63,037 bases of DNA, filler included, from Octopus bimaculoides (GCF_001194135.2; 7 parts of 5 records of this genome joined end to end with filler, not necessarily neighbours in it); one strand, 5' to 3'. Shown: positions 14,779-35,605, counted from the first letter of the whole stretch. Program-made: numbers and translations. The notes: generated from the sequence alone by a model not told the origin.

Positions 14779-15121
14779 NNNNNNNNNNNNNNNNNNNNNN
14801 NNNNNNNNNNNNNNNNNNNNNNGTATGCAACTACATTTATTTTGTTAAATGTATAATAAATTTAATGAACATATACTTAATAAACATATGTTTAATCTCA
14901 CAGTGACAACTGTATCTGTGGACTACTCACAGGAATTTTGGCAGCTGAAAATGAAGTTTATCCCGCTAGTTTTAGCCTTTTTTGAGAATCATTGGGGATT
15001 GCCTAACTGACCTTCCAAAAGGTGAATTTAGGATCAAAGTAGTTTTTAATGAAAAATTCAAGTAAACGCAAGCAAATTATTACTGGTGTAAAAAATATAT
15101 ATGAAAACGTGTATAACATAT

Positions 15122-15171
<50 letters not shown>

Positions 15172-15361
15172 CATCTAAGAATCTATAAGTCAGAAAAATA
15201 TGCAGTTATATATTTGTCAATAGAGTGGGTATATTAATCAAAATATACAGTTTATATATCTATTAAGGCCAGTTTTACCAATCTGTTTATTCTAGGTGTG
15301 TTAAGCACCATCTCTGATATATCCATAATAGACATATTATACTGTACACTTCCATTAATAT

Positions 15362-15402
<41 letters not shown>

Positions 15403-15857
15403 AAATTATAGAGATACAATAGACAATTCCGTAATTTATTTATAAATTTTACATACCCCTTTGAAGGAATTATTTTCCTTACTTTTTTAATATATATAAA
15501 TATATATATAATATATGGAGTTCCTGAAGAGCCATAGCCAAAACAAAATATATTCTATCAGATTAACAAATGTGTGTGCGTCTGCCAATTTGACAAAATG
15601 CTTTGGTCATGTAATTTACATTATGTAACCTTATATTTACCTTATGTTAATAAGAGGTACAAAAGATGATGTAACTAATTATCTTATAAACAATCTCTCA
15701 TATTTTGTTTTGTTTTTTTGCTTATACTCTGTGTAACATTCAGACTCAGGTTTCATAACAAAGGATGCAACACAATTACAATACATAAACAGAAATACAC
15801 ATGGAGTTCTGAAAATTGGTTGTCATGCAGTTTGAGGTTATATATTTATATATATTA

Positions 15858-16068
15858 TTCTTTTATTTGTTTCAGTCATTTGACTGCAGTCATGCTGGAG
15901 CACCACCTTTAGTTGAACAGACCGCCCCCAGGATCTATTCTTTGTAAGCTTTGTACTTATTTTATCGGTCTCTTTTGCTAAACCACTAAGTTACGGGGAT
16001 GTAAACACACCAACATCGGTTGTCAAGTGATGGTGGGGGACAAATATAGACACAAATAACAAACTCAC

Positions 16069-16099
<31 letters not shown>

Positions 16100-16620
16100 N
16101 NNNNNNNNNNNNNNNNNNNNNNNNNNNNNNNNNNNNNNNNNNNNNNNNNNNNNNNNNNNNNNNNNNNNNNNNNNNNNNNNNNNNNNNNNNNNNNNNNNNN
16201 NNNNNNNNNGGGTGGCACATAAAAGACACCATTTCGAGCGTGGCCGTTTTCGTGCGGGTGACACATAAAAGCACCCACTACACTCTCTGAGTGGTTGGCG
16301 TTAGGAAGGGCATCCAGCTGTAGAAACTCTGCCAAATCAGACTGGAGCCTGGTGTTGCCATCCGGTTTCACCAGTCCTCAGTCAAATCGTCCAACCCATG
16401 TTAGCATGGAAAGCGGACGTTAAACGATGATGATGATGATGATGATGATATGTATACGACAGGTTTCTTTCAGTTTCCGTCTACCAAATCCACTCACAAG
16501 GCTTTAGTTGGCCCAAAGTCATAGTAGAAGACACTTGCCCAATGTGTCATGCAGTGAGACTGAACCTGGAACCATGTGGTTGGGAAGCAAGCTTCTTACC
16601 ACACAGTCACTCCTGTGCCT
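15858..16620 (-). mobile_element. tRNA-derived SINE (head 16460-16620, internal microsatellite/gap, tail A 15858-16060) interrupted by an RTE 3' tail
   Basis: Head is the reverse complement of ggcacaggagtgactgtgtggtaagaagcttgcttcccaaccacatggttccaggttcagtc. Head and tail are in the same orientation. Confidence 0.75.
16210..16450 (+). mobile_element. RTE-family 3' UTR with (GAT)n tail
   Basis: ggtggcacataaaagcacccactacactctc...aggaagggcatccagctg...gttaaacgatgatgat, the same as 18980-19187. Confidence 0.85.
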
Positions 16621-16639
16621 ATAATATATATATATATTC

Positions 16640-16757
16640 TTAAACAAGAATATTATTGACAGCGACTTCGAAGTTTTAGTTGGTTAAGCCATCATCCGGC
16701 AATGATGGCTTAACCAACCAAAACTTCGAAATCACTGCCAATAATATTCTTGTTTAA
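16640..16757. repeat. About 118-bp near-perfect palindrome bounded by TTAA
   Basis: 56-bp arms ttaaacaagaatattattgacagcgacttcgaagttttagttggttaagccatcat / atgatggcttaacc...tattcttgtttaa, with loop ccggca. Confidence 0.9.
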
Positions 16758-16976
16758 TCCTTTAACATTCAAGCTACTCTGTCAAAGCAATGCTTATTGA
16801 CTCACATTGTTTTGAATTAATCATGTATTATCTTGTAGCTTTGAGATTTCAATGATGTGATTGTATACTTTTAGAATGACATTCTAGGGTAGATTTGAAA
16901 GGCCAGACCTGGCCGGTTTGAACATAAAACAAGTAAGATATTTTGACTGGATATGACCAGTTTGAATGCTAAAGGG
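16758..16976 (+). mobile_element. piggyBac-like MITE (family 1)
   Basis: TTAA-tcctttaacattc...gaatgctaaaggg-TTAA. A second copy is at 22671-22880. Confidence 0.8.
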
Positions 16977-17159
16977 TTAAGAATAATAAATTTGCACTCT
17001 ACAAAACTATAAAGTAATCCATCAAATTAATGTAAAATTGGTTTTATTACAGCTGAATATAAAAACTATCATATATATATATATAAATATATAAATATAT
17101 AAATATATATATATATAAATATATAATTATTGTCACATATCATATGTCTGCAGGGCATT

Positions 17160-18052
17160 GATGACACATCAACAAAAGTCTTTCTGATTAAGTTCAAGTT
17201 CTCCTGCTGCTTTGCCACTCTTGTCCAGCCAGCTCATGATATTGTCCACCCATTGCATTCTTTGCTTGTCCTCTTGATCTACTATCCTCAACTCTCTCTT
17301 CCATGATAATGTTTTCCAAACCCCTGCTTCTTCGAATATGGTCATAATAGATGAGTTTTTGTTTTTCCACAATGTTCAGAAGTCGTCTTTCACCTTTATG
17401 TTGTAACACCCATTCATTTGTCTGATGATCCTTGTATGAGACTTGTATAACATTCTCCTATCCTCCCACATTTCAAATGCATTGATTATAATCTCTTCAA
17501 ATTTGTTCAGAGTCTGTGTTCCACAACCATAAACACCTATTGGCCAAATGAAAACTTGCACTAGCCTTGTTTTTAAATTAACCCGGGTACTTTTTCTGGT
17601 TCAAATGTTACTAAGCTTTTCCATGGCTGTTCTTGCCATGGCTAGCTGTGTTCTAGTTTCTTTCTTACATGTTGCTTCATCAGAGATATGGGCTCCAGGG
17701 TATTTGTACTATTCAGCCTGTTTGAGCTTCTCACTGCCAAGTTTGATGTTACCATTTACTTTCTCTTCTCCAATAACCATGACATTTATTTTCTCATGGC
17801 TGAGATAACGACCATGAGTGTTTGATACTTTCTTGATTCTCTTTATTATTCTTGGCAAGTGGAGCAGTATCCTCTGCATACCTTTGGTTAGAAATATGTA
17901 AGTCACATATTCTTGATGCCATCCTCTTGCATTGTTTCTAGCATTATCCACTCAGTGTAGATGTTGAACAAATCAAAAGCCTTTCTGTAGTCAATGTAGC
18001 AAAGGAAAGTTGTAAGGTTGTGTGTTCTTGTTTTTTTCTGTATATCTTTCAG
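17160..18052 (-). mobile_element. RTE-clade LINE RT remnant with internal deletion
   Basis: Minus frames give LCYIDYRKAFD, ISNQRYAEDT (YADD-like), LVQVFIWPIGVYGC, NAFEMWEDRRML and MQWVDNIMSW. Confidence 0.85.
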
Positions 18053-18409
18053 AAAGATTTATAGACCAATGCTTTAGTGCTGCTTGTAAATTCATAGCCC
18101 CTATACCTGAAAAACAGCCAAATTTCTACCTAAAGTTATATGACCTCTAAACTTGTAGTATTATTGCTATTTAATTTATTGATAGTGAAGAGCTCTCTGT
18201 GAGATTGATTCCAGCTGATGTCAGCTTTGCCCTTCATCCTTTTGGGGTGCTTCAAATATAGCATATAGCTTTGTACCAAGAAAACCAGCCTAGTACTTTT
18301 TTGGTTATTATCTCACATCTAAGCAGGAACTATATATAAGGAGGAGGTAGATAAAACAGAAACTATACAATGTGTAGAGTGAACAAAACAAAACAGGAAT
18401 TATGCATCA

Positions 18410-19187
18410 TAATCAATGACTAGTGACCAAGACCTTTGGAAATATGCTGTCCGTGAGAAGACCCGGCAAGACAAGTGAAACCGTAACCCGTGGCCTTTAC
18501 CAGGGGTGTAGCCAGCCCACTTATGCGTACCTTTCCTTCTTTGGACACTAAACTCTGTTTGCGAAGACCTGTTGAGGCAAGTAAAATTGAAATCAAACCA
18601 AATTCGACGACTGGCACCCATGCCAACCTTCCTTCATTGGATGCTAAACTCTGCTTGCAAAGACCTGTTGGGGCAAGTGAAATTGAAATTGAACCAAATT
18701 CGATGACTGGCACCAGTGCCAGTGGAGTGTTAACAGCATCATCTGAACGAGATCATTGCCAGAGCAGCTGTCTGGCTTCAGTGCCAGTGGCACATAAAAA
18801 GTACCATTTGAGTGTGATTGTTACCAGTGTCGTCTTACTGGCACTTGTGCCGGTGGCACATGAACAAAACATTCAAGCGGGGTCATTGCCAGTGCCGCTG
18901 GACTGACTCCTGTGCAGGTGGCACATAAGAAACACCATTCGAGCATGGCTGTTGCCAGTACCGCCTGACTGGCCCTCATGCTGGTGGCACATAAAAGCAC
19001 CCACTACACTCTCAGAGTGGTTGGCATTAGGAAGGGCATCCAGCTGACGTTAGGAAGGGTATCCAGCTAGCCATGGAGATCAGATTGGAGCCTGGTACAG
19101 TCATCTGGTTCGCCAGTCCTCAGTCAAATCGTTCAACCCATGCTAGCATGGAAAGTGGATGTTAAATGATGATGATGATGATGATGA
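18410..19187 (+). mobile_element. RTE-family 3' end: ORF terminus, long 3' UTR and (GAT)n tail
   Basis: MTSDQDLWKYAVREKTRQDK*, then a UTR with repeated gtggcacataa units ending ...gttaaatgatgatgat. Confidence 0.8.
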
Positions 19188-19297
19188 ATCACCACTGATT
19201 GCTAGATATATTTACTTTTAGAATAAATGTGTGTGTGTGTGTGTGTGTGTGCAAACTTTCCATGGAAGTCAGTTGTGTGCAAGAGCTAACTACCTAC

Positions 19298-19553
19298 CTG
19301 TGGTCTATGTATGTAAACTTGCCATCAATACTATGTCGAGAGACATACTCTGTGGGCCGCATGTGAATTGCACCGCTTTCAGGTAGATTGTATGGACTAA
19401 ATGCTGGCAATGTCCGACCAACGGCCACCAAACAGCTTAAGTTACACAGTTCGTTGTCATTTTCCACTTCATCCTCACCTCCAATGTCCATTCGTGTTGG
19501 TGGCCAGGATTTCAAGTACCCTGTACAGTGAATTATGCAGAAGTTTTTTCTGT
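19298..19553 (-). CDS. ARNTL: BMAL1/CYCLE-type gene, internal exon (linker to PAS-B start), 256 nt, phase 1-2
   Basis: Acceptor ...ttttttaaatttttacag, donor CAC AG|GTAGGT. Translates (D)RKNFCIIHCTGYLKSWPPTRMDIGGEDEVENDNELCNLSCLVAVGRTLPAFSPYNLPESGAIHMRPTEYVSRHSIDGKFTYIDH(R), matching BMAL1 TGYLKSWPP...CNLSCLVAIGR...EYVSRHAIDGKFVFVDQR. Confidence 0.96.
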
Positions 19554-19643
19554 CTGTAAAAATTTAAAAAAGCAAAAAAGAAATATATATATATATATAT
19601 ACAACCAAAAAGAAACAAATGTTGATTGAAGAAATATGGTAAC

Positions 19644-19817
19644 AAAAGGGTTGAAGTGATCTAAATTAAAACTTTCCATCAAAATTTCCCGTTAATTTAT
19701 GCTCCAAAAACCAGCTTAATTATTGAAAAATTGTTTTACTAAATTCTTCATTATTTTCAAAATTAATGGCAGCAAAGACTGCATATTTCAACAGAAATAT
19801 GATAATAAAAGGGTTAA
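19644..19817 (-). mobile_element. piggyBac-like MITE fragment (family 2)
   Basis: Reverse complement of the element at 33162-33702. Ends aaaggg-TTAA. Confidence 0.7.
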
Positions 19818-20671
19818 AGACGGATGTTCTTCTTAAGTATGTTTTAGAGGGAGAGAGAAACAAAAAGAGAGAGGGGAAGAAAGAGAGAGAGAGAGTGAGA
19901 GATAGTGAGAGAGTGGTGATTCTTCTGGTTAAAGTACTAGTTCTCTTGTATCCACATTTCCATGGCTCTTATAATTTTACTGCCATCCATATTTGCTCAT
20001 TGTTCAAAATGAGCTTTAGTTTTCATGTATATGATTGGCCAATTTATGATGTGACTATCAATGAATTCAACTTCCTCTTAATATCACATGAATATCAATC
20101 AATCAAATCAATCAATCAATCAATCAATCACAGCCTCCTGTTAGTATTGCATGATTAGTTAAACTGTGTCACTGCCTATATTGGTACTCTCATTAGATTT
20201 ATAAAAGGCTGTGAAATCTACTATAGTCATTTAGCCAGTTTTAAAAAGATTAAGTTCTTCAACTGTATTTTTTGTCGCTAGGTAACACAAGTATGTGTGT
20301 GGGTGGGGAGGGAGGAAATTACTCCTCAACAAAAATATTGGAGCCTATCAGAAGAGTATCAATAGAAGACCTCACTTTGCATATACAAAGTGAAAGAGTC
20401 TCTTGATTGGCTAATGTGTGTGTGTATGTCTACGTCTATATATATATATATATATATATATNNNNNNNNNNNNNNNNNNNNNNNNNNNNNNNNNNNNNNN
20501 NNNNNNNNNNNNNNNNNNNNNNNNNNNNNNNNNNNNNNNNNNNNNNNNNNNNNNNNNNNNNNNNNNNNNNNNNNNNNNNNNNNNNNNNNNNNNNNNNNNN
20601 NNNNNNNNNNNNNNNNNNNNNNNNNNNNNNNNNNNNNNNNNNNNNNNNNNNNNNNNNNNNNNNNNNNNNNN

Positions 20672-20720
<49 letters not shown>

Positions 20721-21059
20721 CACACACACATGTATATACATATATATATATATACATTATATACATATATATATGAATATATATGTATATATATATTCAT
20801 GTGTATATATATATATGTATACACACACACATGCACACACAGAAACATACATACATCATCATCAACATCAACATAGTTATATATATAAATCAATGTCATG
20901 ATCACGTAATGGAAAATGGATATTCACTGATGGTGATGATATTCATCTACTGATCTATCTATCTTGATGATGATGTATGTATTCAAATGTATATATATTT
21001 TTTCATATATGTATACATATATAGATATTATAAATAGATAAAAATATGTGCACGTTTAC

Positions 21060-21236
21060 CTGATTTTCGTTTTTTATGGGAATGCTCAGCTTCAACATCT
21101 TTTTCTACCTTGACAGCGCTGGGAACAACATCTGCAGATTTATTGACACATTTCATCCGACAGAAGAATGAGCGTCTGGCACCAGAGCAGAGTTGAGTGG
21201 GTTTCTGAGGTAGTTCTGTTCTCACTGGAAGCATGG
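21060..21236 (-). CDS. ARNTL: BMAL1/CYCLE-type gene, internal exon (PAS-A end and linker), 177 nt, phase 1-1
   Basis: Acceptor ...ttctgttgtgattacag, donor TCAG|GTAAAC. Translates (T)MLPVRTELPQKPTQLCSGARRSFFCRMKCVNKSADVVPSAVKVEKDVEAEHSHKKRKS(D). LCSGARRSFFCRMKC is the BMAL1-type motif, and phases match both neighbours. Confidence 0.95.
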
Positions 21237-21671
21237 CTGTAATCACAACAGAAGATATATTAACATAGCAGAAGAATAAACCCTTCTTTACGAGATATAA
21301 AGAAGAAGGTTTTTTTTTACCTTTTTGTGTTAAGTATGTGGAAGGGTTGAAAATTAATAACATTGTTAATGTCACTGACAACAAACATATATAAAGCAAT
21401 ATGTATGTTAGTCTAAACAAATACTACCTCCTAATATTATCAATGCTATATGAAGAAACTTGGTCAGACTTAAAGTACTTTCGTCCTAAAATGGTTCTTA
21501 AGTGACTGTTATGTAACTTCAGTGCTAAAGTACTTTCTATGACACCAGAAAGTAGCTGGAAGCCTGTAATATTTTCCTTAAGAAACATATTTCTACTGAA
21601 AAGGATTAAGTAACCTTTATAGTTTAATGTTAAATTATTTTTATTTATAACTTAGCATAAAACAAATATTA

Positions 21672-21699
<28 letters not shown>

Positions 21700-21712
<13 letters not shown>

Positions 21713-21932
21713 CCTTTGTCTTGACATCATGTGATGGTTATAAATGAGCATCACTGTCACACAAGCAAAATTGTCATTTCCAGCCTTCCATGAAAAACAT
21801 GTCTGGCCAAGGGGAAATATTTTATTATCTTGCTTGGAAACTGGCATCCAGTTGGAGAAAATCTGCCTCAACAAATTCTATCTAGCCCATGTAAGCATGG
21901 AAGAGTAAACATTAAATGATGATGATGATGTA
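21700..21932 (+). mobile_element. SINE 3' tail (type B, RTE-like end)
   Basis: ...gcatccagttggagaaaatctgcctc...gcatggaagagtaaacattaaatgatgatgat. Homologous to 32040-32240 and 37640-37870. Confidence 0.7.
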
Positions 21933-22124
21933 ATTAGCAGATAATTACGCTGATTACTTGCGGAATTTACCATTTATGAATTTCAGATAACAGATCAACA
22001 CATTGGTTTGTATTTCTGACTCATTGCATATACACCCTCGCAGTAGGTGAATGTAAATATTTATAGATTGATGGAGCTGGTGGAGGAAAGAAGATCTTTC
22101 CAAAGAAAATGTGATTCTACTTAC

Positions 22125-22242
22125 TTTTTGCATCAATGTACCGTTCTCTTGGCGTTAGATCTGAAGAGCTAAGTTGTTCTTTGATTTTGCCAATGTCTCG
22201 TGGATGAAGAATATCAAACAAACTTTGGCCAATTAAATCGGA
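22125..22242 (-). CDS. ARNTL: BMAL1/CYCLE-type gene, internal exon (PAS-A), 118 nt, phase 0-1
   Basis: Acceptor ...tttctatcttcag, donor AAA A|GTAAGT. Translates [39 protein letters not shown](T), matching BMAL1 [40 protein letters not shown]. Confidence 0.96.
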
Positions 22243-22670
22243 CTGAAGATAGAAATAACATAAGAGATTTAAAAACAAAACACAAAAGAATGGTTGAAGC
22301 TACTGTGATGATCTATAGTAATCAAAGATATTATTTCTTGCCAACATAATCAAAATTATGTGTGATGTGAAGGAATTGGTTGACAAATTATTTTTTCTTT
22401 TTGTTTTTCATTAGTTTAACAATCAAAGTTGTTTTCTTTTCAAAACTGTCTTTGATAATTTTGTTTGTTTGGAACTCACTATTTTACTGTTCAGCTTCTT
22501 CATAGCTCAACGCAAACTAAAATTACTAACAACGTTTCTAGGGGAATAAATCACAGAGATGATTAGTAAATATGTCTACCACCAGGAACCAAAATAAGAA
22601 CTTTAGGATTTCTTTGGTTACACTCTATTCCCTTTTATGCTTTTCATAATATATGAAGAACAAAAATTAA

Positions 22671-22880
22671 CCCTTTGGCATTCAAATTATTCTGTTAAGC
22701 AAAATGCTTATTTTTTTATGTTGTTTTGATTTAATCATGCATTATCTCACTGCTTCTAGATTTTTATAATGTGATAATATATTTTTAGGAGGATATTTTA
22801 TAGTAGGTATGAGAGGTCAGTTTGAACATAAAACATGTAGACTATTTGGACCTGATATGGCTGGTTTAAATACTAAAGGG
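22671..22880 (+). mobile_element. piggyBac-like MITE (family 1)
   Basis: TTAA-ccctttggcattc...aatactaaaggg. Body is homologous to 16758-16976. Confidence 0.8.
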
Positions 22881-23039
22881 TTGGAAATGAGTGTTTTATA
22901 AAACAAAGTGTTTATGAGTTCAAGTTTTTGTTTTTTAATTAAAAAAATTTCTATTCATGGATTTCATTGTCACAAGTAATGTGGTAAATGATATTATTTA
23001 TTTGATTTGATTTTTTCACTCTTCCTAATTAGTGGTATC

Positions 23040-24470
23040 AATGTTTTAGCATACTATGTGGGGACCAGCATACCAAAGAACAGACCCAGTGTCTCCTCTG
23101 TGTGGTAGGAGGTTGAAGTAGGATCTGCATTCCAACCTCACAAACCCTCACCAGCAACAATCTCTTGTACAAATGCCAAAAATTCTCTCCTCCAGGGAAG
23201 TACCCCATCAATCTATAAAGCATGTTGCATGAAGTGACTGGGGCAAATCTGTCAAGACCCTCTCTGCTAAACAGAGAAAACTCTGGAGAACTGGAGGGTT
23301 GTTGTCTGAGTTGTACAAAGGTGTCCTCTGTTGGGAATGGAAACCACAGTTCAACTTGAGGAGACTTTTTCAGATGGGGACCTGAAATGTTCTCGCTCTG
23401 ATGGATGATTCCTGTTAGCCTCTAATGTCTTTGGAACTCAACTGTTTGCGAGTTGCTGTGGTGGCCCTATCAGAGGTGCATCAGCCAGGGAGAGGTGACA
23501 TTGCAACCAGTGGTTACACCTACTACTGGTCTGAGTGCTCTGATGGTTGGCATGTTAGTGGGGTTGCAGTTGCAGTGGCAGACTGGCTGGTTCCAATGGT
23601 ATTAGATATAACACCTGTCAATGAGTGTATTATGTGGTGGAGGATTCAACATTTTTCTGGGTGTTGTTTCTCTTTTTGCAGTGTATGTTCCAACTGCTAT
23701 GAGTAACAGGTCAGTGAGGGAGACAGTCTACACCCAGCTGTGCTATGTCGTGGAGAGTATTTCCAGTAGGGACACGTATCTCCTTGGTCATGGGAGATTT
23801 CAGTCCTTCAACTAGAATTGGCAGAATGGGATGCAAGAGTGTTGTCAGCCTTTTTTGATCTGGTACTTGGAACTATAGTGTTGTGATGCTCCTGGACTTT
23901 GCCTAAAGCTATGGACTTCACATTGTTGGCTCCTGGTACCAACGTTCTGAGCTGACTTGGTATTTTAATACTGGCCATGTGACAAAGGAGATTGACTATG
24001 TACATGTAGATGGCCACTGGAAATTCCTACAGAACTGCAGGCTTTTCAGAGAGCTAGTTTCTTAGGCACTGACCATAGACTTGTTGCAGCTGAGTTATGA
24101 TTACAGGCAAAATCTAAGAGGTTGAAAGCAGTCAATCACAGACTGGATGTTGACAGGCTCAAAGTTAACAGTGTAAGCAAGACTTATTCTCAGCAACTTG
24201 GATCTGTGCAACCTGAGGTTGAGTCCCTGTCTCATCCTAAGGGAATGTGGGAAACATATAGGGACACCCTATTATTGATTGCTAGGGAATGTATTGGTTT
24301 CCAAAAATAGGTCAGGGAACATTTCCTTTCCAGGAAGACTGTTCAATGTCTGCATGGATTGGATACTTGACCAAATGGAGGCTCAGTTGAGTTGTGGTGC
24401 ATTCATTGGTGAAACTTGGATTACAGACCTAAATTTTGCTGATGATGCAGTTATCTTTGCAGTTATTCTT
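23040..24470 (+). mobile_element. RTE-clade LINE remnant (APE endonuclease plus short RT piece)
   Basis: Frames give LRVAVVALSEV..PGRG..ATSGYTYYWS, VSLFAVYVPT, VMGDF, TKEIDYVHVD and LFNVCMDWIL...ITDLNFADDAVIF. Multiple frameshifts. Confidence 0.88.
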
Positions 24471-24670
24471 GCTTTTATCTGTTTGTCCTCCCCACATTTG
24501 ATAAACTGATAATGATGATTATGATAACAATAATGATGGTGGTGAAGGTGGTGATGATAATGATGTGGATTACAGTAAGGAAATAGTTATTGACAATATT
24601 AGCAATAATTTGACACTATGAATATGCTATTTGAGAGAGGGAGAGAGAGGGAGGGAAGAGAGAAATGTAT

Positions 24671-24743
<73 letters not shown>

Positions 24744-24803
24744 GAGAGAAGAAAAGAATGTGAGAAAATAAAATGGTGCAAATTGGAAATAAAGAAGCCA
24801 TAC

Positions 24804-24896
24804 CTGTGAAAAGTTTAACGTTCTCTTTACAGACTGTGAGACATATAGTATTTTGCCTCTATCACAGCTTACAACAAACAGGAATCCATCAGCAGC
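24804..24896 (-). CDS. ARNTL: BMAL1/CYCLE-type bHLH-PAS gene, internal exon (start of PAS-A), 93 nt, phase 0-0
   Basis: Acceptor ...tttcatcaatag, donor CAG|GTATGG. Translates [31 protein letters not shown], matching recalled BMAL1 [31 protein letters not shown]. Confidence 0.95.
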
Positions 24897-25185
24897 CTAT
24901 TGATGAAACAAGAGAGAGGTGAAGATGAGTAAAATTAGAGAGAGAGAGAGCAGAGGTCAGAGAGATTTTAACTAAAATTTATATGGTAACACAACATGGG
25001 AAATATGAAAACTGTATTATTTAATAGGCTAAATAGTTTGTTGTTATTATTGTAGAATTGTTTCTAGCTAAGTATGATATTCACCCAAAAGTGGATGTCT
25101 GTATACAATAAGTTGAATTATGGGATGGATGTCCAGGTCCAAAGATAAGGTTGACCAGTGCAATTGAAATATTCTGGTTCTGTAT

Positions 25186-25400
25186 AAGGTGGCAAACTGA
25201 CAGAATCGTAAGCACGCAGGTCACAATGCTTAGTGACATTTTGTCCATCTTTACATTCTGAATTCAAATTTCACTGAGGCTGACTTTACCTTTCATCCCT
25301 TTGTGGTCATTAAGATAAGTATCAGTTGAGTACTGGGTTTGATGTAATCTATGTATCCTCTCCCCCGAAATTGCTAGCCTTGTACCAAATTTTGAAACCA
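25186..25400 (+). mobile_element. tRNA-derived SINE (family C)
   Basis: ggtggcaaactgacagaatcgtaagcacg...ttcaaatttcactgagg...ccttgtaccaaattttgaaacca. Copies at 32920, 33264, 48596, 49225 and 51560. Confidence 0.8.
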
Positions 25401-26174
25401 AAATTTTGATTCTAAATTAATGTTTAAGACCAGAACATTGTTGATATGATGTCAAGGTATCTTGGAATGGTCACTCTATTTCCATCTACAAGTTGTCATG
25501 TGATTTAAACATTGGGATGTCAGGAGAACATTCATTAAAAATATTCATTCAGTGTAAATGAACTGTTTAAATCAAAAAGGCTGATGGTGTCTTAGCATCA
25601 CTCACAAAGACCTTTGTCACCTGCTCACCAGTTATCTATCTAAAGCTATGTATGGCTATGGTACCTCTGAACTTAGAGCTTGCATCTCCTGTTTGTGAGC
25701 TCAAAATCTTAACCACATAGTTACATGCTTTCACACACACACACACATAAATATATATATGTGCATACACACACACACACACACATGTACATACATTTAT
25801 AAATGCATGCACATTTTCATATTCTTTTCTTGCTATAGGGTAAGAAGCTAGATTTTGCATAGAAACATGTTTCAGAAAAACACTCCTCCAAATTACCATC
25901 ACCATTTCCTGTTTTACACATCACCATACTCAAAGCCAGCGAAACTGCAATAATTGGATAAAAAATTTGATTGATTTCCACAAATCAAATGAAGGTGATG
26001 GATATAAATTATATTTTTGTTCTGCAAATATGATTATATAGCCATTTTATTGTGGATTTATTTAGTCATATACAAGCTGTTCAGGCCATGCTTATGGCTA
26101 AGTCTGTTTACATTCATACATTATGAGGAAGCAGTGTATGTGTATTGTTTCAGCACCATATATCCTTTCATAGT

Positions 26175-26537
26175 GGAGGCGCAATGGCCCAGTGGTTAGG
26201 GCAGCAGACTGGCGGTCATAGGATCGCGGTTTCGATTCCCAGACCGAGCGTTGTGAGTGTTTATTGAGCGAAAACACCTAAAGCTCCACGAGGCTCTGGC
26301 AGGGGATGGTTGCGAACCCTGCTGTACTCTTTCACCACAACTTTCTCTCACTCTTACTTCCTGTTTCTGTTGTGCCTGTAATTGAAAGGGTCAGCCTTGT
26401 CACACTGTGTCACGCTGAATATCCCTGAGAACTACGTTAAGGGTACACGTGTCTGTGGAGCAGGCTGTTCCGTTGATCGGATCAACTGGAACCCTCGACG
26501 TCGTAAGCGACGGAGTGCCAACACACACAACACACAA
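26175..26537 (+). mobile_element. tRNA-derived SINE (family D)
   Basis: A box tggcccagtggttagg, B box ggtttcgattccc. The 3' core gagaactacgttaagggtacacgtgtctgtggag is shared with 49815-50130. Confidence 0.85.
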
Positions 26538-26924
26538 CATTCTTACATATCAATACTTTAATATTTGTTTGGTTCTACAGGTGTGGAATCTGAATATAAA
26601 ATTAACAATGAGATATCGAAGTCTTTATTTAATATGATTGTTTTACTTTCACATTGTCCTTGTGTTAGTCATTGAGGTGAATACAAAACCCAGACAAATA
26701 TACAGCAACAATCGTAGTTTCACTTGTGAGTGTGAAAAGGAGAGACAGCATCCATAACTGTTTTATGGTATAGAATAGCTAAGTGCATAGAGATAGTTAT
26801 GTGTGGCTTGTACGATTAAACGTTCAATTTGAAATTTTTGGAAGGTGAAAGAAAATATGGGGTGGCGTTTTTAGAGGGTAGCAATTCAGGAAAAGACATG
26901 TTAAGTAGAGTGTTGTAGTTCAGG

Positions 26925-27587
26925 GGAAGACAAAAAAGTTAACAGAATCAATGACAGATGATTATGTGCAGACCCTTCTGAAGTTCCACATGTTATGCAT
27001 ACAAAATTTCCTGCAACTGTCATGGTTTTAGGGGTTGTCAGCAATGAAGGACATGTGATGCCTCCTTACTTCTTTTCAGAAGGCCTTAGAGTTAACACTG
27101 CCCCTTACATTGAGGTCCTGGAAATAATTGTTAAGTCCTGGATAGACAGTGTATGCAATGGAAGACTCTGCACTATCACACATGGCTTTAGTAACACAGG
27201 AATGGATGGCTGAAAACGTTCATGATCACATAACCCTTAACATTTGGCCTCATAATTCCCAAAATCTCAATTCATTGGATTATTACATGTGGAGCGTTGT
27301 TGAGAGAGAGGTCAATGAACACGCCCATAACACCAAAGATTCTTTGAAAGCTGCCATAGCCAGAGTAATGTCCAAAATGAACCAGGACCACTTGATTCGA
27401 GCATGTAGATGATTTAGATCTCATATAGAAGCAGTTGTTGAAGCTGAAGGTGGCTTTATTGAATAACATTATAGAAAAGAAGGTTTATTTTTATCCTCAC
27501 CATTTTTTGATAAATAAAGTTATTGTCTGTTATTATGTATCTGTATTTTTTTATAAACATAAACCTCTCCTCAAATGTCTTACCCTG
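26925..27587 (+). mobile_element. Tc1/mariner (maT/DD37D-like) transposase C-terminal remnant with right end
   Basis: MHTKFPATVMVLGVVSNEGHVMPPYFF...WPHNSQNLNSLDYYMWSVVERE...IEAVVEAEGGFIE*. The element ends ...ttaccctg. Confidence 0.85.
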
Positions 27588-27879
27588 TTTATATTTATGT
27601 ATTGTTTGCTCATTACCATTGGTTTAATGTTGAATTGTATCTAAATAATACACACACACACACACACACATGCCAAATAATACACACACACACATATACA
27701 TATACATGTATGCACATGCACACACGCACGGGCACACACACACAGAGACACACACACACATCATATTTTCTAATGATTTTTCAACAGCCAATGAGATCTC
27801 AGGCACTAATCATATTTTGATTTGTTTACAAATAATTTTGTTTATATACATTGATGGTGATGATCATGATGGTGACGAT

Positions 27880-27911
<32 letters not shown>

Positions 27912-28019
27912 ATTATTGTGCTACTTCGCTACTTCAGTTGTTTGAATAATTGATCAACAACACAGAACTCAGAGATACAATTACAGAGGCTGTACCTTCT
28001 AATAATATACATACTTACA

Positions 28020-28078
<59 letters not shown>

Positions 28079-28157
28079 NNNNNNNNNNNNNNNNNNNNNN
28101 NNNNNNNNNNNNNNNNNNNNNNNNNNNNNNNNNNNNNNNNNNNNNNNNNNNNNNNNN

Positions 28158-28199
<42 letters not shown>

Positions 28200-28209
28200 G
28201 AATCATTTG

Positions 28210-28474
28210 TAGAAATACATAAATCTGGAGAAGCACACTCTAAGATGTAGAGCAGTTAATATTATAGTGGGGTACGCTGGTTTATGGGGTTACCCTGGGT
28301 CTCTCTCTCATAAGGAGTTTAGCCTTACACCATATCTTCAGGCACCAAACACTAATGGCCTGAGACCTCTTTAAAATAGATTTTAAAGAGGTCTCAGGTT
28401 ACCAGTGTTTGAAGTCAGAAGATACACCGTAAGGCTAAACCCCTTATATGCAAGAAACTGGCCTGCCCCACTAT
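28210..28474. mobile_element. Foldback element (211-bp palindrome 28264-28474) plus a unique flank
   Basis: atagtgggg...ccccactat termini and a perfect 19-bp central arm pair cctgagacctctttaaaat-ag-attttaaagaggtctcagg. A partial homologue is at 52461-52606. Confidence 0.85.
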
Positions 28475-28498
28475 GATATATATGTACATATATATTTA

Positions 28499-28708
28499 CA
28501 GTAGAACCTCGGTTTTCAAACAACTCTGATCAAGAATAAATTGTACTTTATTTCCTGTCTTTCTCATATTCATTTAATACAGTAGTACCTCAGTTTAAGA
28601 ACACCTCTGATCACGAATAAATCGTGCTTTATATATATCTATATTATCTATATATATAAAGCACGATTTATTCGCTATCAGAGTTGTTTGAAAACCAAGG
28701 TACTACTG
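28499..28708. mobile_element. pogo/Tigger-like palindromic MITE (28580-28708) with an extra TIR copy at 28499
   Basis: TA-cagtagtacctcagttt...aaaccaaggtactactg-TA, with arms extending to cgaataaatcgtgcttta. Confidence 0.8.
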
Positions 28709-28807
28709 TATATTTAACATCCAACATATATTTTTATTTTTATTCTCATACTTCCTATATCTCTCCCTTTCCAAAATAACTTCTTATACTGAACTCTAAT
28801 ATTTCCT

Positions 28808-28851
28808 TCTATGATGATGGGATATCGTTTATCCCTGAAACAGCTGTAAGA
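28808..28851 (+). ncRNA. Penelope-type minimal hammerhead-like motif (variant core)
   Basis: tct ATGATGA T GGGATA tcgtt TATCCC T GAAAC AGCT GTA aga. Confidence 0.45.
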
Positions 28852-28969
28852 CTATCATTCTCTTTATAAATGTCCTAGAAATTTCACACTGCTTTGGCTT
28901 TGTTATCACATTTTATTTTACATATACATGCTCACACATGACTCATGTTAGAATCCTCGCTCATACTAT

Positions 28970-29192
28970 TATCGAACCAGGAGTCTAACAATGGTACTTC
29001 CACAGCACTTACATAGCCTTGAAGGAAAATGTTCTCTATGTGGCTTGTGTGTTTTCTGTACTCTGGTTATTATTATTTTCTTGTCTACGTTTTGTTTGCC
29101 ATGTCCTGTACCCAGATATGCACCTATATATACAGGTAGACGTAGGTATGCACATACCTGTACGTATATATGCATATACTCATTTATTATTT
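28970..29192 (+). mobile_element. Penelope-terminal-like repeat, homologous to 58855-59060 (opposite strand)
   Basis: Shared atgttctctatgtggct...gtcctgtacccagatatgcacctata...gcacatacctgtacgtatatatgcatatactcattta. Confidence 0.7.
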
Positions 29193-29309
29193 GNNNNNNN
29201 NNNAGAAGGAATAGACAAAATCCAAACCACTATAGTCTATTGACTAATTTTTCTACATGCTAGGCCACTGGTAGTAAAAATTTCTAAAATTTTTATTACC
29301 CTGATAATA

Positions 29310-29359
<50 letters not shown>

Positions 29360-29889
29360 TACACACATATGTATGTATACACATGCACACACACATATAA
29401 ACATGTAAATATATACATATATCTGCAACACAAAGTATGGGTAGGCAACATAAAGCAGTGTCTCTCCAGACTAAAACTATAAATATTAATAATATAAATA
29501 TTAATTATTAATCTGGAAAAAAAAATGATTTCCAGTTCATTGTATGCATGTTAATTTAATGAAAGGAATTCAGTGTGTAATTCAATAAATGATTACTCTA
29601 TTGATGTGAGACAGACACAATTTCCATAGCCTTTCAAGTTCAGTGTATAAAACTACATGTACAGCGTATTAAATCCATATGCTGTGATTTCATCTCCAGG
29701 ATGAATGAAATGTAAGTGTGTGGAAAGCAGAAATTACTCTGCTTTCTTTCTGTATCAATACAGTATGATCAGTGTATGTGAGTGTGTAGTTATATTGAAA
29801 TAATGATTGCATGTATGTGTGTGTGTTACATTGAAAGGTTGAGCGGGTTGGGGATGCATACAAACCACTGAGCATATTTATTCCTACTG

Positions 29890-29921
<32 letters not shown>

Positions 29922-29936
29922 ATATAATATAATATA

Positions 29937-30187
29937 GGATAAATTCTTTATAAGAATTTATCAAGTAGTCAGCGTGAAAAAACCTCATAATGAAAAAATA
30001 ACGAAAAATTTCGTAATGAAAAAATTCATCGTTTCTTCATAGATATATTTAATTATATATAAAGGGCATTAACTGTGTATTAATGCCTCACGCTATCGAG
30101 GGACTAAATAAGTAAAAAAACTACCAAAAATAAGCAACATATTTACCGAAAGCGACTACTTGATAAATTCTTATAAAGAATTTATCC
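29937..30187. mobile_element. MITE with perfect TIRs that each contain an internal hairpin
   Basis: TA-ggataaattctttataagaatttatcaagtagtc ... gactacttgataaattcttataaagaatttatcc-TA. Confidence 0.88.
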
Positions 30188-30835
30188 TATATATATTATA
30201 AATAATTAGAATATATTCAGTGCTGAATATCATTCTGTATAAGCACATGTTACCGAGATGCAACTGGATAAATTCAAATCTCTTTCAGGGATATATAATT
30301 GTGAACAAAAGTCATCGTTACTGTGATGGCTACATCGTGGTAGGTTGATTCTTGTTTATTTTTATATATCTTGACCATACGTGTACTGATGAACAAAAGA
30401 ATACAGGTTACTTCACAGTTTTTTCTGTATTTGATTGAGAAACCAGTGGTCTACCGTTGAGTTAAATGTTTTTAAGAGATAAATTTTGAAAAGCTGCATT
30501 CCCTCGCTTTTGGTAAATATGTTGCTTATNNNNNNNNNNNNNNNNNNNNNNNNNNNNNNNNNNNNNNNNNNNNNNNNNNNNNNNNNNNNNNNNNNNNNNN
30601 NNNNNNNNNNNNNNNNNNNNNNNNNNNNNNNNNNNNNNNNNNNNNNNNNNNNNNNNNNNNNNNNNNNNNNNNNNNNNNNNNNNNNNNNNNNNNNNNNNNN
30701 NNNNNNNNNNNNNNNNNNNNNNNNNNNNNNNNNNNNNNNNNNNNNNNNNNNNNNNNNNNNNNNNNNNNNNNNNNNNNNNNNNNNNNNNNNNNNNNNNNNN
30801 NNNNNNNNNNNNTATATATATATATATATATATAT

Positions 30836-31296
30836 ATGGTCATCCTGGCTGAAGAAAGTTGCTGCTCGAAGGCCATATGTATGGCAGCAGGATTCGGCTC
30901 CTTGCCATACCTCCAGAAAGAGTCAAAAGTGGTGGCTGGAGAATTTCTACAAATTCACCAGCCCCAATTTCTGGCCTTTTAATTCCCCCAATTTTAATCT
31001 CATAATTTACTGTGTGTAGGGAGCAGTTGAGAAAGGCACCAACAACACCAAGCTGGTGGCCAAGATCAAGGAGGTGTTCAAAGATCTTCCCATGGACACA
31101 GTGAAAAATGCATGCATCAAGTTTCAGACCCATCTTCAGACTATGGTGGAAGCTGAGGGTGACTGTTTTGAGTATCCTGTTATCTCCCAGCCATAGTTGC
31201 TATTCTGGATTTTTTTAAATACTTTTATTTTTGTATGAGATATTTTGTTTTCTTTTCCTATTTATGCAAACTGTTAAATTTATCTCGAACACACTG
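30836..31296 (+). mobile_element. Second maT/DD37D-like transposase remnant (different subfamily)
   Basis: RPYVWQQDSAPCHTSRKSQKW...FWPFNSPNFN...MVEAEGDCFE. The element ends cacactg-TA. Confidence 0.8.
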
Positions 31297-31784
31297 TATA
31301 TACATATGTATGTATGCACATATGCATGTAGTTATGTACATATGTATGTATGTATGTATGTATATATGCATATATGTATGCATGTATGTATGTATGTATG
31401 TATGTATGTATGTTTGCATGTATGTATGTACATATGCATGTAGTTATGTATGTATGTATGTATGGATGTATGTATGTATGTACATACACATTTCATTTCT
31501 TTCTTTCCACACATTCTCCGCATTCAGTGCCCATGTATTGCTACCATGCAATATGTAGTTTCACTAAGAAGAAGCCAGCAGTGGTGCAAATCTGAACTAA
31601 ATCCCATTTAAGCTAATTCTCTTCCTAATTGTTCCAGTGTACTGCACCATCTTCCATTACTAAGGGCATATTGGTCAATGTAGTTATAGATACACAAAAC
31701 AAGTTATTTATGGCAACAACAACAACAACTGATAATCATTTAATATCAGCATATCCTATATATTTAACCATTTATAATGGTATG

Positions 31785-32240
31785 GGTGCCTGGTTAAGAA
31801 GGTCACTTCCAAACCATATGGTTTGTGTTCAATCCTGCTGTATGACATAATGGGCAGATGTCTTCTACTACAGGCCCTGGCCAACCAAACTAGCCAAAGT
31901 ATTGTAAGTTTATGTGGTAGGCAGAACCTGATTGAATACCATCATATATACATATTTAATGTGTGTGTGTGTCACGGGTTATGTGCTTGTATGTGTTCGT
32001 AGTTCCTTGTTTTGATATTGCAGGATAATTGTAAACAAACATCATTGTTGTACAAGCAGTGTAATTCCTTTCCAGTATTCCATGAAAAACATCTAGTAAT
32101 GAGGAAATATAAGCTTACTTGGAAGCAGGTGAGGGTTGGTGACAGGAAGGTCATCCAGCCATTGAAAATCTACCTCAATGAATTTCATCTGATCCATGCA
32201 AGCATGGAAAAGTAGACATTGAAGTGATGGAAAGGATGAC
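31785..32240 (+). mobile_element. Diverged composite SINE: tRNA head, microsatellite, tail B
   Basis: The head is homologous to 38323, and the tail ends aggaaggtcatccagcc...gcatggaaaagtagacattgaagtgatg. Confidence 0.6.
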
Positions 32241-32430
32241 ATTTGAGGAAGATTTGACTGCAATAACTTACGAGTCAAGCAACTAAAGAGCGGCTTTTTT
32301 GTTAGCATATGTTCCCTCACTAAACATGTACACACACAAACAGCCACGATATTAACAGCCTCGTGATTGCATGTTAGCATGCATACATGCTGGTATGTAT
32401 GTATGTATGTATGTATGTATGTATGTATGT

Positions 32431-32715
32431 TATTCTGATTATATGTCTGTGCACACGTTTGAATGTGGTGTGTGCCAGAGGGCTTGCAAATCCAATGGGG
32501 GTCTTAAAAGACATGTTAGGATTCACAATGAGCAGAACTTACCTGCAGCTATTGGTAGTACAAATCAGAGGTACAATCTGTGTGGGTGTTTTTTCAAAAC
32601 ATTGTCTGGTTTAAAAAGTCACATCAGACACCATGAAAGGGCTAAGGTGTATGTGCAGGAGGTAGTCAAACTCTGTGTAAGGAGTAGACAACCACCACCA
32701 TGTATGTATGTAAGT
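32431..32715 (+). mobile_element. Probable RTE-type LINE 3' end with two C2H2-like fingers
   Basis: FECGVCQRACKSNGGLKRHVRIH...RYNLCGCFFKTLSGLKSHIRHH, embedded in (TATG)n. The finger style resembles the RTE end at about 6650. Confidence 0.55.
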
Positions 32716-32919
32716 ATAATAAAATAATGATGAGCTTATTGTATACAGTGCATAGGTGCACCACAACTTGTTGGAAAAGGGTAAAAGAGGGGACTGGAAC
32801 AAGTTGCATAAAGAAAGATGGCAAGAAAAAACAAAAGTACATGTGCAACCATTTACACTCATAAGAAAATTGATTGGTGAACACTTCTGACCTTTGATTT
32901 ATAGAACTAAAACATAGAC

Positions 32920-33115
32920 AGCATATTAGTTTCAAAATTTTGGCATGAGGTTGATTACATCGACCCCAGTGTTCAACTGGTACTTATATCATCAACCCTG
33001 AAAAGATGAAAAACAAAGTTAACCCTGGTAGACTATGAACTCAGAACATGAAGATGGACAAAATACCACTTAGCATTTAGTGTGCATGCTAATGATTCTG
33101 CCAGCTTGCCACCTA
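32920..33115 (-). mobile_element. SINE family C
   Basis: Reverse complement of the 25186 family (gattacatcgaccccagtgttcaactggtac...ctgccagcttgccacc). Confidence 0.75.
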
Positions 33116-33161
33116 AAACACAGATAACATTGAAAATTGTTACAGTCTAGGTCAGAATTAA

Positions 33162-33702
33162 CCCTTTTGTTATAATATTTCTGTTGAAATATACTACCTT
33201 TATTTCAATTTATTCAGAAAATATCGAAGAATTTATTGAAATAACTGTCATTATTAAGCTGATTTTAAGATGGTGAGCTGGCAGAATCACTAGTACACTG
33301 GGCAAAATGCTTAGCAGCATTTCATTCATTTTTACATTCTGAGTTCAAATTCCACCAAGATTGACTTTGCCTTTTATCTTTTTGGGGTCAATTGATTAGT
33401 TGTCTCCCACAAATTTCAGGCCATGCGTCTATAGTAGAAAGGATTTTTAAACTAATTTTCACTGAGGTTGACTTTACCTTTCATCCTTTTGTAATTTGAT
33501 AAATTAGGTACTAGTTGGGCACTGGGATCAATGTAATAGACTCCCAGCTACTGAACTTGCTGGCCTTGTGCCAAAATTTGAAACCATTATTAAGCTGATG
33601 TGTGGAGTATAAATCAACCTGTAATTTTGTTAGGTTTTAATTTAGATCACTTTAAAATAGGAACTGTGTATCATAGAGCCAGGCAGGCTGGTATCAAAAG
33701 GG
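33162..33702 (+). mobile_element. piggyBac-like MITE (family 2) carrying a nested family C SINE dimer (33264-33584)
   Basis: TTAA-cccttttg...caaaaggg-TTAA. The insert is flanked by the direct repeat cattattaagctgat (33249-33263, 33585-33599). Confidence 0.82.
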
Positions 33703-33859
33703 TTAAGCAGTAAATTAACTTCTCATCAATTCACAATTTTGATAGAACATCTGATCTACTAAAACTGGCGTCTGCATAAGTAACATGCACACACACAAAA
33801 AAAGCCTAAAAAGTCTAAAAAACAGAAAAATTTTTTAAAACCTCCCTATTCATATTCAC

Positions 33860-35453: not shown

Positions 35454-35491
<38 letters not shown>

Positions 35492-35605
35492 CAGTCAATG
35501 TAAACATCACCAGTGTCTTTACTAGATGTAGTAAAAGTACATACCTGTCATTTCTACTTGTATATCAAACATACACATGTACACACTCATTTACCTTGGT
35601 CTTTG

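What the first reader, a model, noticed from the sequence alone, without database searches (positions are those of the whole stretch)
19298..24896. Hidden four-exon block of a BMAL1/CYCLE clock gene among repeats
Seen: four minus-strand segments with canonical GT-AG sites whose phases chain (0-0, 0-1, 1-1, 1-2) into one open frame. Two of them are absent from the ORF track. Established: the motifs GQSLFD.LHP, LCSGARRSFFCRMKC, GYLKSWPP and NLSCLVA.GR are BMAL1-type rather than ARNT/Tango-type. Inference: this is the core positive-limb clock gene of a probable cephalopod.
Basis: partly seen in the sequence, partly recalled or inferred. Interest (0 to 1): 0.7.

Follow-up and report, generated by a model that had tools for sequence, protein, structure and literature searches.

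The report
Octopus BMAL1 clock gene exons
These are four real, intact exons (the PAS-A part) of the ordinary BMAL1/CYCLE circadian-clock gene in an octopus genome, lying among transposon debris and microsatellites; it is the expected orthologue and nothing about it is unusual.

Summary
Four minus-strand exons (24896-24804, 22242-22125, 21236-21060, 19553-19298) have AG/GT borders and phases 0-0, 0-1, 1-1, 1-2. They splice into an open 644-nt frame of 214 aa.

The peptide matches crystallised mouse and human BMAL1 at 273 bits, against 162 bits for the best ARNT. In a labelled NJ tree it falls in the BMAL/CYC group, apart from ARNT/Tango, in 200 of 200 bootstraps. Its closest relatives are gastropod, annelid and nemertean BMAL. 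All five intron positions match those of the BMAL1/cyc genes of a snail and a beetle.

The N gap (20462-20671) lies inside intron 3, within a (TA)n microsatellite. It touches no reading frame, and homologues show no residues missing across the E3/E4 junction.

Octopus origin is supported. One unrelated 20.5-kb stretch of Octopus bimaculoides chromosome shares 53 repeat matches with the piece, including a SINE-like element at 99.2% identity. A snail locus used as control shares only exons and a microsatellite.

Only the PAS-A part of the gene lies in the piece. The bHLH, most of PAS-B and the C-terminal exons lie beyond it.

Verdict: a correct reading of an ordinary, conserved gene. Low interest.

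The parts
24804..24896 (-). Exon E1 (93 nt, phase 0-0): [31 protein letters not shown], the start of PAS-A
   Evidence: AG|..|GT borders and open frame. tblastn E 1e-8 to 1e-11. Same intron positions in snail and beetle genes.
22243..24803 (-). Intron 1 (2561 nt). It carries plus-strand ORF debris at 23425-24509 that reads like a decayed LINE.
   Evidence: Flanked by the E1 donor GTATGG and the E2 acceptor ..CTTCAG. The LINE reading is mine, from motifs seen; Pfam found nothing.
22125..22242 (-). Exon E2 (118 nt, phase 0-1): [39 protein letters not shown](T)
   Evidence: tblastn E 1e-12 to 1e-19. Pfam PAS hit over residues 2-47 of the spliced peptide.
21237..22124 (-). Intron 2 (888 nt)
   Evidence: Donor GTAAGT, acceptor ..GATTACAG.
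21060..21236 (-). Exon E3 (177 nt, phase 1-1): (T)MLPVRTELPQKPTQLCSGARRSFFCRMKCVNKSADVVPSAVKVEKDVEAEHSHKKRKS
   Evidence: 77% DNA identity over 96 nt to the snail exon.
19554..21059 (-). Intron 3 (1506 nt as assembled). It contains the assembly gap N 20462-20671, which abuts an (AT)n array at 20672-20821.
   Evidence: No residues are missing across the E3/E4 junction compared with homologues.
19298..19553 (-). Exon E4 (256 nt, phase 1-2): DRKNFCIIHCTGYLKSWPP...NLSCLVAVGR...EYVSRHSIDGKFTYIDH(R). It covers the end of PAS-A, the linker and the first strand of PAS-B.
   Evidence: tblastn E 1e-12 to 1e-29. Residues 195-214 also match ARNT PAS-B crystal constructs at their N-terminus.
24897..38174 (-). 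Upstream intron, cut off by the end of the piece (more than 13.2 kb). No bHLH or pre-PAS exon was found. It is filled with microsatellites, two mariner remnants, a C2H2 ORF and four N gaps.
   Evidence: tblastn with 12 homologues at E up to 20 finds no further BMAL exon..
14823..19297 (-). Downstream intron, cut off by the end of the piece (more than 4.4 kb). The next exon (ATxILGYLPQELLGTS..) is not present. It holds SINE-like and tandem repeats and one N gap.
   Evidence: The homologous snail intron is 10 kb.

Best explanation
The block is exons of the single-copy-type BMAL1/CYCLE (ARNTL) orthologue of an octopus, either Octopus bimaculoides or a very close relative. The four exons encode nearly all of the PAS-A domain, the PAS-A/PAS-B linker and the first beta-strand of PAS-B.

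Shown: exon structure, open frame, orthology group, conserved intron positions, and octopus-type repeats around the exons.

Inferred from orthology with mouse BMAL1 (crystal structure of the CLOCK:BMAL1 bHLH-PAS-AB heterodimer, PDB 4F3L) and with insect CYCLE: the full protein pairs with CLOCK through its bHLH, PAS-A and PAS-B domains. It binds E-box DNA and drives transcription of the negative-limb clock genes. The PAS-A segment encoded here would form one of the three dimerisation interfaces.

The surrounding repeats are ordinary intron filling. The N gap is an assembly break in an intronic (TA)n microsatellite.
For: - Exons, phases and splice sites.
- Pfam PAS / PAS-A families.
- PDB: BMAL1 273 bits (query 1-213 against positions 94-294 of the 4f3l_B chain), best ARNT 162 bits.
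- Best named hits are molluscan BMAL1 and insect CYCLE.
- Representative search and cluster names: Platynereis Bmal, Bulinus, Bradybaena and Lineus BMAL1 are closest; the ARNT, BMAL2 and CYC clusters were labelled.
- NJ bootstrap: ARNT against the rest 200/200; window + gastropods 136/200; window + gastropods + Platynereis + Lineus 124/200. Tree and identity table.
- Motif columns are BMAL-type.
- The five intron positions are identical in the Candidula unifasciata BMAL1 gene and the Diabrotica cyc gene.
- Octopus origin: 53 blastn matches covering 3465 of 23352 bp with one unrelated 20.5-kb O. bimaculoides stretch. These include a 237-bp SINE-like element with a (GAT)n tail at 99.2% identity. 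None overlaps an exon. The snail control gives only exons and a microsatellite.
Against: - Only 214 of roughly 600-750 residues are in the piece. No bHLH exon lies within 13.2 kb upstream and no PAS-B exon within 4.4 kb downstream, so a complete gene is not demonstrated here.
- No octopus BMAL1 protein or transcript could be retrieved for a direct match. Best identity in the databases was 65%, and exon ORFs were not on record.
- No expression data are available, so the junctions are predicted, not observed.
- Placement within Lophotrochozoa is only moderately supported (62-68% bootstrap).
- Species assignment rests on shared repeats with a single O. bimaculoides stretch. No other cephalopod was available as a contrast.
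Confidence: 0.93

Rival explanations
1. The exons belong to the ARNT/Tango gene, the general bHLH-PAS partner of AHR, HIF and SIM, rather than to BMAL1/CYCLE.
For: ARNT is the closest paralogue and still matches at 162 bits over the whole peptide. The 'WPP' of GYLKSWPP and the CLVA.GR core are shared with ARNT.
Against: There is a 111-bit deficit relative to BMAL1. Identity is 39-42% against 63-67%. The ARNT clade excludes the window peptide in 200/200 bootstraps. ARNT-type residues (CMGSRRSFICRMR, GYIKAW, G(S/T)TLYD) are absent.
Confidence: 0.01
2. The block is a partial duplicate or decaying fragment of BMAL1 (PAS-A only) stranded among transposons, and not part of the functional full-length gene.
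For: No neighbouring BMAL exons occur in 13.2 kb upstream or 4.4 kb downstream. The surroundings are dense with transposon remnants and microsatellites.
Against: All four exons are open, all eight splice sites are canonical with pyrimidine tracts, and the phases chain. Conservation is as high as between functional orthologues: 65-67% identity to snail and frog, with the most conserved motifs intact. Long flanking introns are normal for this gene: the homologous snail introns are 20 kb (between its E1 and E2 counterparts) and 10 kb (after its E4 counterpart). None of the repeats overlaps an exon.
Confidence: 0.04
3. Chance open frames with fortuitous GT-AG sites in AT-rich repetitive DNA.
For: GT and AG dinucleotides and short open frames are abundant in any 23-kb stretch. 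262 ORFs of at least 30 aa are listed.
Against: Per-exon tblastn E-values reach 1e-29 and the whole peptide reaches 1e-80 to 1e-84. The exons are collinear with the homologues, and the borders fall on the same residues as the introns of snail and beetle.
Confidence: 0

Closest known systems
Mouse/human BMAL1 (ARNTL), crystallised with CLOCK (PDB 4F3L, 8OSJ)
   Same: Same orthology group. The match is 273 bits, collinear over query residues 1-213, with BMAL-type residues at every diagnostic motif. The expected mechanism is the same: a CLOCK partner and E-box activator.
   Different: About 63-67% identity to vertebrate BMAL1. The loop between LCSGARRSFFCRMKC and DRKNFC is longer (VNKSADVVPSAVKVEKDVEAEHSHKKRKS). 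The window gene predates the vertebrate BMAL1/BMAL2 duplication. Only the PAS-A part is visible here.
Gastropod BMAL1 genes (Candidula unifasciata, Bulinus truncatus, Bradybaena similaris, Littorina saxatilis)
   Same: They are among the closest named relatives, at about 65% identity; frog BMAL1 is as close at 66.7%. The five intron positions are identical in the Candidula gene. They group with the window peptide in 136/200 bootstraps.
   Different: The three gastropods used in the tree form their own clade, excluding the window, in 200/200 bootstraps. The gastropods have GYLKSWSK and ILNCLVA where the window keeps the ancestral GYLKSWPP and NLSCLVA.
Platynereis dumerilii Bmal (U5NDP5) and Lineus longissimus BMAL1
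   Same: Lophotrochozoan orthologues, at 63% and 56% identity, in the same subtree.
   Different: Different phyla. Support for the joint grouping is only 62%.
Insect CYCLE (Diabrotica, Colletes, Nilaparvata, Drosophila)
   Same: Same orthology group, with the same five intron positions in the Diabrotica gene. Identity is 50-57%.
   Different: Drosophila-type CYC lacks the C-terminal activation domain (stated in 10.1101/2024.12.25.628932). Whether the octopus protein has that domain cannot be seen, because those exons lie outside the piece.
ARNT / ARNT2 / Tango
   Same: Same bHLH-PAS class II partner fold and domain order. The match is 162 bits.
   Different: A separate clade in 200/200 bootstraps, at 39-42% identity, with different residues at all four motifs. 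The window gene is not a member.

Membership tests
BMAL1/CYCLE (ARNTL) orthology group | PAS-A domain with BMAL-type sequence | tested here: met
   Pfam PAS (PF00989) 1.1e-6 and Per3-like PAS-A 2.7e-6. PDB BMAL1 273 bits against ARNT 162 bits. Motif columns are BMAL-type.
BMAL1/CYCLE (ARNTL) orthology group | Phylogenetic grouping with BMAL/CYC to the exclusion of ARNT/Tango | tested here: met
   NJ tree of 30 labelled sequences over 209 columns. The ARNT clade separates from the rest, including the window peptide, in 200/200 bootstraps. This is NJ only; no ML tree was built and no cephalopod references were available.
BMAL1/CYCLE (ARNTL) orthology group | Gene structure shared with known BMAL1/cyc genes | tested here: met
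   All five intron positions bordering E1-E4 coincide with those of the Candidula BMAL1 gene and the Diabrotica cyc gene.
BMAL1/CYCLE (ARNTL) orthology group | N-terminal bHLH DNA-binding domain | tested here: inconclusive
   No bHLH exon lies in the 13.2 kb upstream that the piece holds. The piece ends there and contains four N gaps, so absence from the gene is not shown.
BMAL1/CYCLE (ARNTL) orthology group | Complete PAS-B domain | tested here: inconclusive
   Only its first strand (EYVSRHSIDGKFTYIDH) is present at the end of E4. The next exon is not within 4.4 kb downstream.
BMAL1/CYCLE (ARNTL) orthology group | C-terminal transactivation domain (BMAL1-type as opposed to Drosophila CYC-type) | not testable with these tools
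   The C-terminal exons lie outside the piece.
BMAL1/CYCLE (ARNTL) orthology group | Heterodimerises with CLOCK, activates E-box transcription, needed for rhythmicity | not testable with these tools
   Functional property, inferred from orthology only.
ARNT/Tango | Groups with ARNT and carries ARNT-type PAS-A residues | tested here: not met
Cephalopod (Octopus) genome | Lineage-specific interspersed repeats shared with a reference octopus genome | tested here: met
   53 blastn matches to one unrelated 20.5-kb O. bimaculoides stretch (GCA_001194135.2, CM046616.1), the best being 237 bp at 99.2%. The 54-kb snail control shares only exons and a microsatellite.

The most novel reading that the evidence does not exclude
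The four-exon block might not be part of the canonical full-length gene. It could be a PAS-A-only partial paralogue, or an alternative transcription unit lacking the bHLH, which could act as a non-DNA-binding competitor for CLOCK. The evidence does not exclude this, because no flanking BMAL exons are visible within the piece.
Probability: 0.03. Interest if true: 0.45.

Novelty: already known. Interest (0 to 1): 0.1.

Why it matters
It matters little beyond correct annotation. BMAL1/CYCLE is present throughout Bilateria, and molluscan Bmal1 has already been studied functionally, for example by RNAi in abalone (PMC9189711).

From my own knowledge, not checked here: the O. bimaculoides genome is public with an automated gene annotation, which should already carry this gene.

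My searches of the held library found no paper dedicated to cephalopod BMAL1. The exact exon coordinates could therefore help someone designing probes, primers or guides for octopus chronobiology. The finding also shows that exon-level reading recovers genes that a prokaryote-style ORF track misses.

Tried and rejected
Exon E4 alone was used instead. The best hit had only 63% identity, so no cephalopod sequence could be pulled out. Representatives are clustered at 50% identity.
- The first homologue search listed only proteins of 375 aa or fewer, so full-length BMAL1 entries, octopus included, never appeared.
- Exact look-ups of the ORFs containing E4 and E3 in public assemblies found nothing on record.
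- Rfam and tRNA scans of the piece found nothing. The SINE-like element was not recognised as tRNA-derived, and no A/B-box pattern was found.
- Pfam on ten repeat-derived ORFs gave only a weak DDE_3 hit and a C2H2 hit. The LINE-like readings remain unverified.
- A mariner composite peptide was tried as a species marker. Hits were 62-71% to a moth, an ant, O. bimaculoides and unnamed contigs, so it did not discriminate. It did provide the handle (P0294) for fetching true octopus DNA.
- Seven literature searches and one supplement look-up found no cephalopod BMAL1 study or sequence.
- Considered and rejected: ARNT/Tango; BMAL2 (a vertebrate-only paralogue); a retrocopy (the block has introns); and chance ORFs.
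Full report
**Observation.** Translating the minus strand of 19200-25300 shows four open segments carrying the quoted motifs. Reading the borders base by base gives the following exons.
- E1 24896-24804: 93 nt.
- E2 22242-22125: 118 nt.
- E3 21236-21060: 177 nt.
- E4 19553-19298: 256 nt.

Each is preceded by a pyrimidine-rich tract ending in AG and followed by GT (GTATGG, GTAAGT, GTAAAC, GTAGGT). The phases are 0-0, 0-1, 1-1 and 1-2. Spliced, they give 644 nt, or 214 codons plus two bases, without a stop.

In the mechanical ORF list, E1 lies in no ORF at all. E2 lies in a 53-aa ORF, below the default 60-aa threshold. E3 and E4 lie in ORFs of 130 and 73 aa. This explains 'two absent from the ORF track'.

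**The assembly gap.** The N run at 20462-20671 lies between the E3 donor (21059) and the E4 acceptor (19554), so it is inside intron 3. There are 388 nt and 908 nt of read intron on its two sides. No reading frame crosses it. It abuts a 150-nt (AT)n array.

The other gaps for which a repeat was called are also flanked by microsatellites. These are breaks typical of a short-read assembly.

The peptide runs ..HKKRKS|DRKNFCIIHCTGYLKSW.. across the E3/E4 junction. It aligns without a missing residue to mouse BMAL1 and to the snail and beetle proteins. Those genes have a single intron at this very position and no intervening exon. The join across the gap is therefore supported by gene collinearity. 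A small alternative exon in the unread bases cannot be formally excluded.

**Identity of the gene.** Pfam finds PAS and PAS-A families in the spliced peptide. Against all PDB chains, the best matches are as follows.
- Mouse BMAL1b from the CLOCK:BMAL1 crystal: 4f3l_B, E 1.3e-80, 273 bits, query 1-213 collinear with chain positions 94-294.
- Human BMAL1: 270-272 bits.
- Best ARNT: 162 bits.
- ARNT2: 152 bits.
- CLOCK: 32 bits.

In the large protein collection the best named hits are BMAL1 of the gastropods Candidula and Littorina (65% identity), a frog BMAL1 fragment (63%), beetle CYCLE (57%) and zebra-mussel BMAL1 (58%).

A search of 1.84 billion cluster representatives with exon E4, followed by cluster look-ups, named further relatives. 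These were Platynereis Bmal, Bulinus and Bradybaena proteins, Lineus BMAL1 and a Solemya protein. The look-ups also labelled separate clusters for vertebrate BMAL2, lamprey BMAL1, insect, barnacle and mite CYCLE, and seven ARNT/ARNT2/Tango proteins.

On 209 aligned columns of 30 labelled sequences, a neighbour-joining tree separates the ARNT clade from everything else, the window peptide included, in 200 of 200 bootstraps. The window groups with the three gastropods in 136/200. It groups with gastropods, Platynereis and Lineus in 124/200. Identity is 63-67% to frog, gastropod and annelid BMAL, and 39-42% to the ARNTs.

Vertebrate BMAL1 and BMAL2 form their own clade. The invertebrate gene is therefore co-orthologous to both.

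Column by column, the window has the BMAL-type state at each motif.
- GQS.FD against G(S/T)TLYD.
- C(S/P)GARRSFFCRMK against CMGSRRSFICRMR.
- GYLKSW against GYIK(A/N)W.
- (L)SCLVA against (F/Y/C)CLVA.

None of the four exact strings occurs in any of the seven ARNTs. The exact strings are not universal within BMAL/CYC, however, and the final PP of GYLKSWPP is shared with ARNT. The motif argument is right in direction, and the tree carries the weight.

**Gene structure.** In the Candidula unifasciata BMAL1 gene, the introns fall at N|VADGF, YSQ|SDLIG, DVK|T, RKRKS|ERK and VDER|ATVIL. In the Diabrotica cyc gene they fall at ILQ|AADGF, YSQ|GDLLG, DAK|T, KYNS|DKKY and IDQR|STLV. These are the five positions that border E1-E4 in the window, so the exon calls rest on ancient, conserved introns.

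The snail introns after its E1 and E4 counterparts are 20 kb and 10 kb. It is therefore not surprising that the piece holds no further exon. tblastn with twelve homologues, at permissive settings, finds no bHLH exon in the 13.2 kb upstream and no PAS-B exon in the 4.4 kb downstream.

**Organism.** The protein databases returned nothing closer than 65%, so the taxon had to be tested another way. A decayed mariner in the window (26931-27576) led to a related transposase annotated in Octopus bimaculoides. From it I fetched 20.5 kb of that genome at an unrelated locus (GCA_001194135.2, CM046616.1).

blastn of the piece against this single stretch gives 53 matches covering 3465 of 23352 bp. None overlaps an exon.
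- The best match is a 237-bp SINE-like element with a (GAT)n tail (window 16210-16446) at 99.2% identity.
- Further copies match at 88-94%.
- A 532-bp repeat matches at 78%.

The control, 54 kb of the snail BMAL1 locus, shares only exons E1 and E3 and a microsatellite. The piece therefore comes from O. bimaculoides or a very near relative. The frequent estimated-length N gaps and about 36% G+C are, from my own knowledge, what a short-read octopus assembly would look like.

**How it works.** Three things are shown: an intact, conserved, intron-containing coding block for BMAL-type PAS-A; the A/B linker; and the first PAS-B strand.

The rest is inferred from orthology with mouse BMAL1 (PDB 4F3L) and from established knowledge of the animal clock. 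The full protein would dimerise with CLOCK through its bHLH, PAS-A and PAS-B domains. It would bind E-boxes and activate the negative-limb genes. The segment encoded here would supply the PAS-A interface.

Whether the octopus protein carries the BMAL1-type C-terminal activation domain cannot be seen from this piece.

**Rivals.**
- ARNT/Tango is refuted.
- A stranded partial duplicate is not excluded but is unlikely, at about 4%. All frames and splice sites are intact, and conservation equals that between functional orthologues.
- Chance is excluded by E-values down to 1e-84.

**Novelty and value.** This is the expected orthologue of a universally conserved clock gene in a published genome. Molluscan Bmal1 has already been cloned and knocked down (PMC9189711). 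The held literature has no dedicated cephalopod BMAL1 study, so the coordinates have modest practical use. There is nothing surprising in sequence, structure or context.

Noticed in passing
window 16210-16449 and 18976-19187: SINE-like retroposon of about 240 bp ending in a (GAT)n tail. The first copy abuts the N gap 16100-16209. The two window copies are 81% alike. The first is 99.2% identical to a copy on O. bimaculoides chromosome CM046616.1, which implies a very young family. ARAGORN and Rfam did not recognise it as tRNA-derived.
   Followed up: partly
window 18533-18996: Two adjacent tandem arrays, 96 bp x2 (87% matches) and 66 bp x3.7 (70%). They begin about 300 bp downstream of the E4 donor. 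The whole 18649-19179 block recurs in the O. bimaculoides stretch at 78%, so it is part of a dispersed composite repeat.
   Followed up: partly
window 26931-27576 (+) and 30813-31196 (+): Two decayed Tc1/mariner transposase remnants with frameshifts and stops, showing only a weak Pfam DDE_3 hit. The second abuts the N gap 30530-30812. Related transposases at 62-71% identity occur in a moth, an ant, O. bimaculoides and many unnamed contigs, the scattered distribution typical of mariners.
   Followed up: partly
window 23425-24509 (+) and 17169-17561 (-): ORF debris that reads like LINE endonuclease and reverse-transcriptase fragments (for example ..NFADDAVIF.. and a C-terminal ..YKDHQTNEWVL..RRLL.. 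motif), antisense to BMAL1 in intron 1 and in the downstream intron. Pfam found nothing, so this is my reading only.
   Followed up: partly
window 32371-32727 (+): A 118-aa ORF with C2H2 zinc fingers (Pfam zf-C2H2 9.7e-6; FECGVCQRACKSNGGLKRHVRIH). It begins inside a (GTAT)n microsatellite, in the upstream BMAL1 intron on the opposite strand. It could be a remnant of a zinc-finger gene or of a transposon protein.
   Followed up: no
window 20672-20821, 28022-28196, 36140-36220 and elsewhere: The N gaps at 20462-20671, 28079-28157 and 36224-36362 directly abut microsatellites ((AT)n; (AC)n and (TA)n; (ACAT)n). 32 tandem-repeat rows were called in 23 kb. The assembly evidently broke at simple repeats.
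   Followed up: yes
window 35823-36822: A strongly strand-asymmetric stretch (GC skew -0.49, AT skew +0.33) made of degenerate (ACAT)n/(AC)n-type repeats. It produces a spurious 302-aa Cys/Val/Tyr-rich minus-strand 'ORF' at 35886-36794.
   Followed up: no
L001 (Candidula) and L003 (Diabrotica): The introns flanking the PAS-A exons of BMAL1/cyc sit at identical codon positions in a snail, a beetle and the octopus window, so these five introns predate the protostome radiation.
   Followed up: yes
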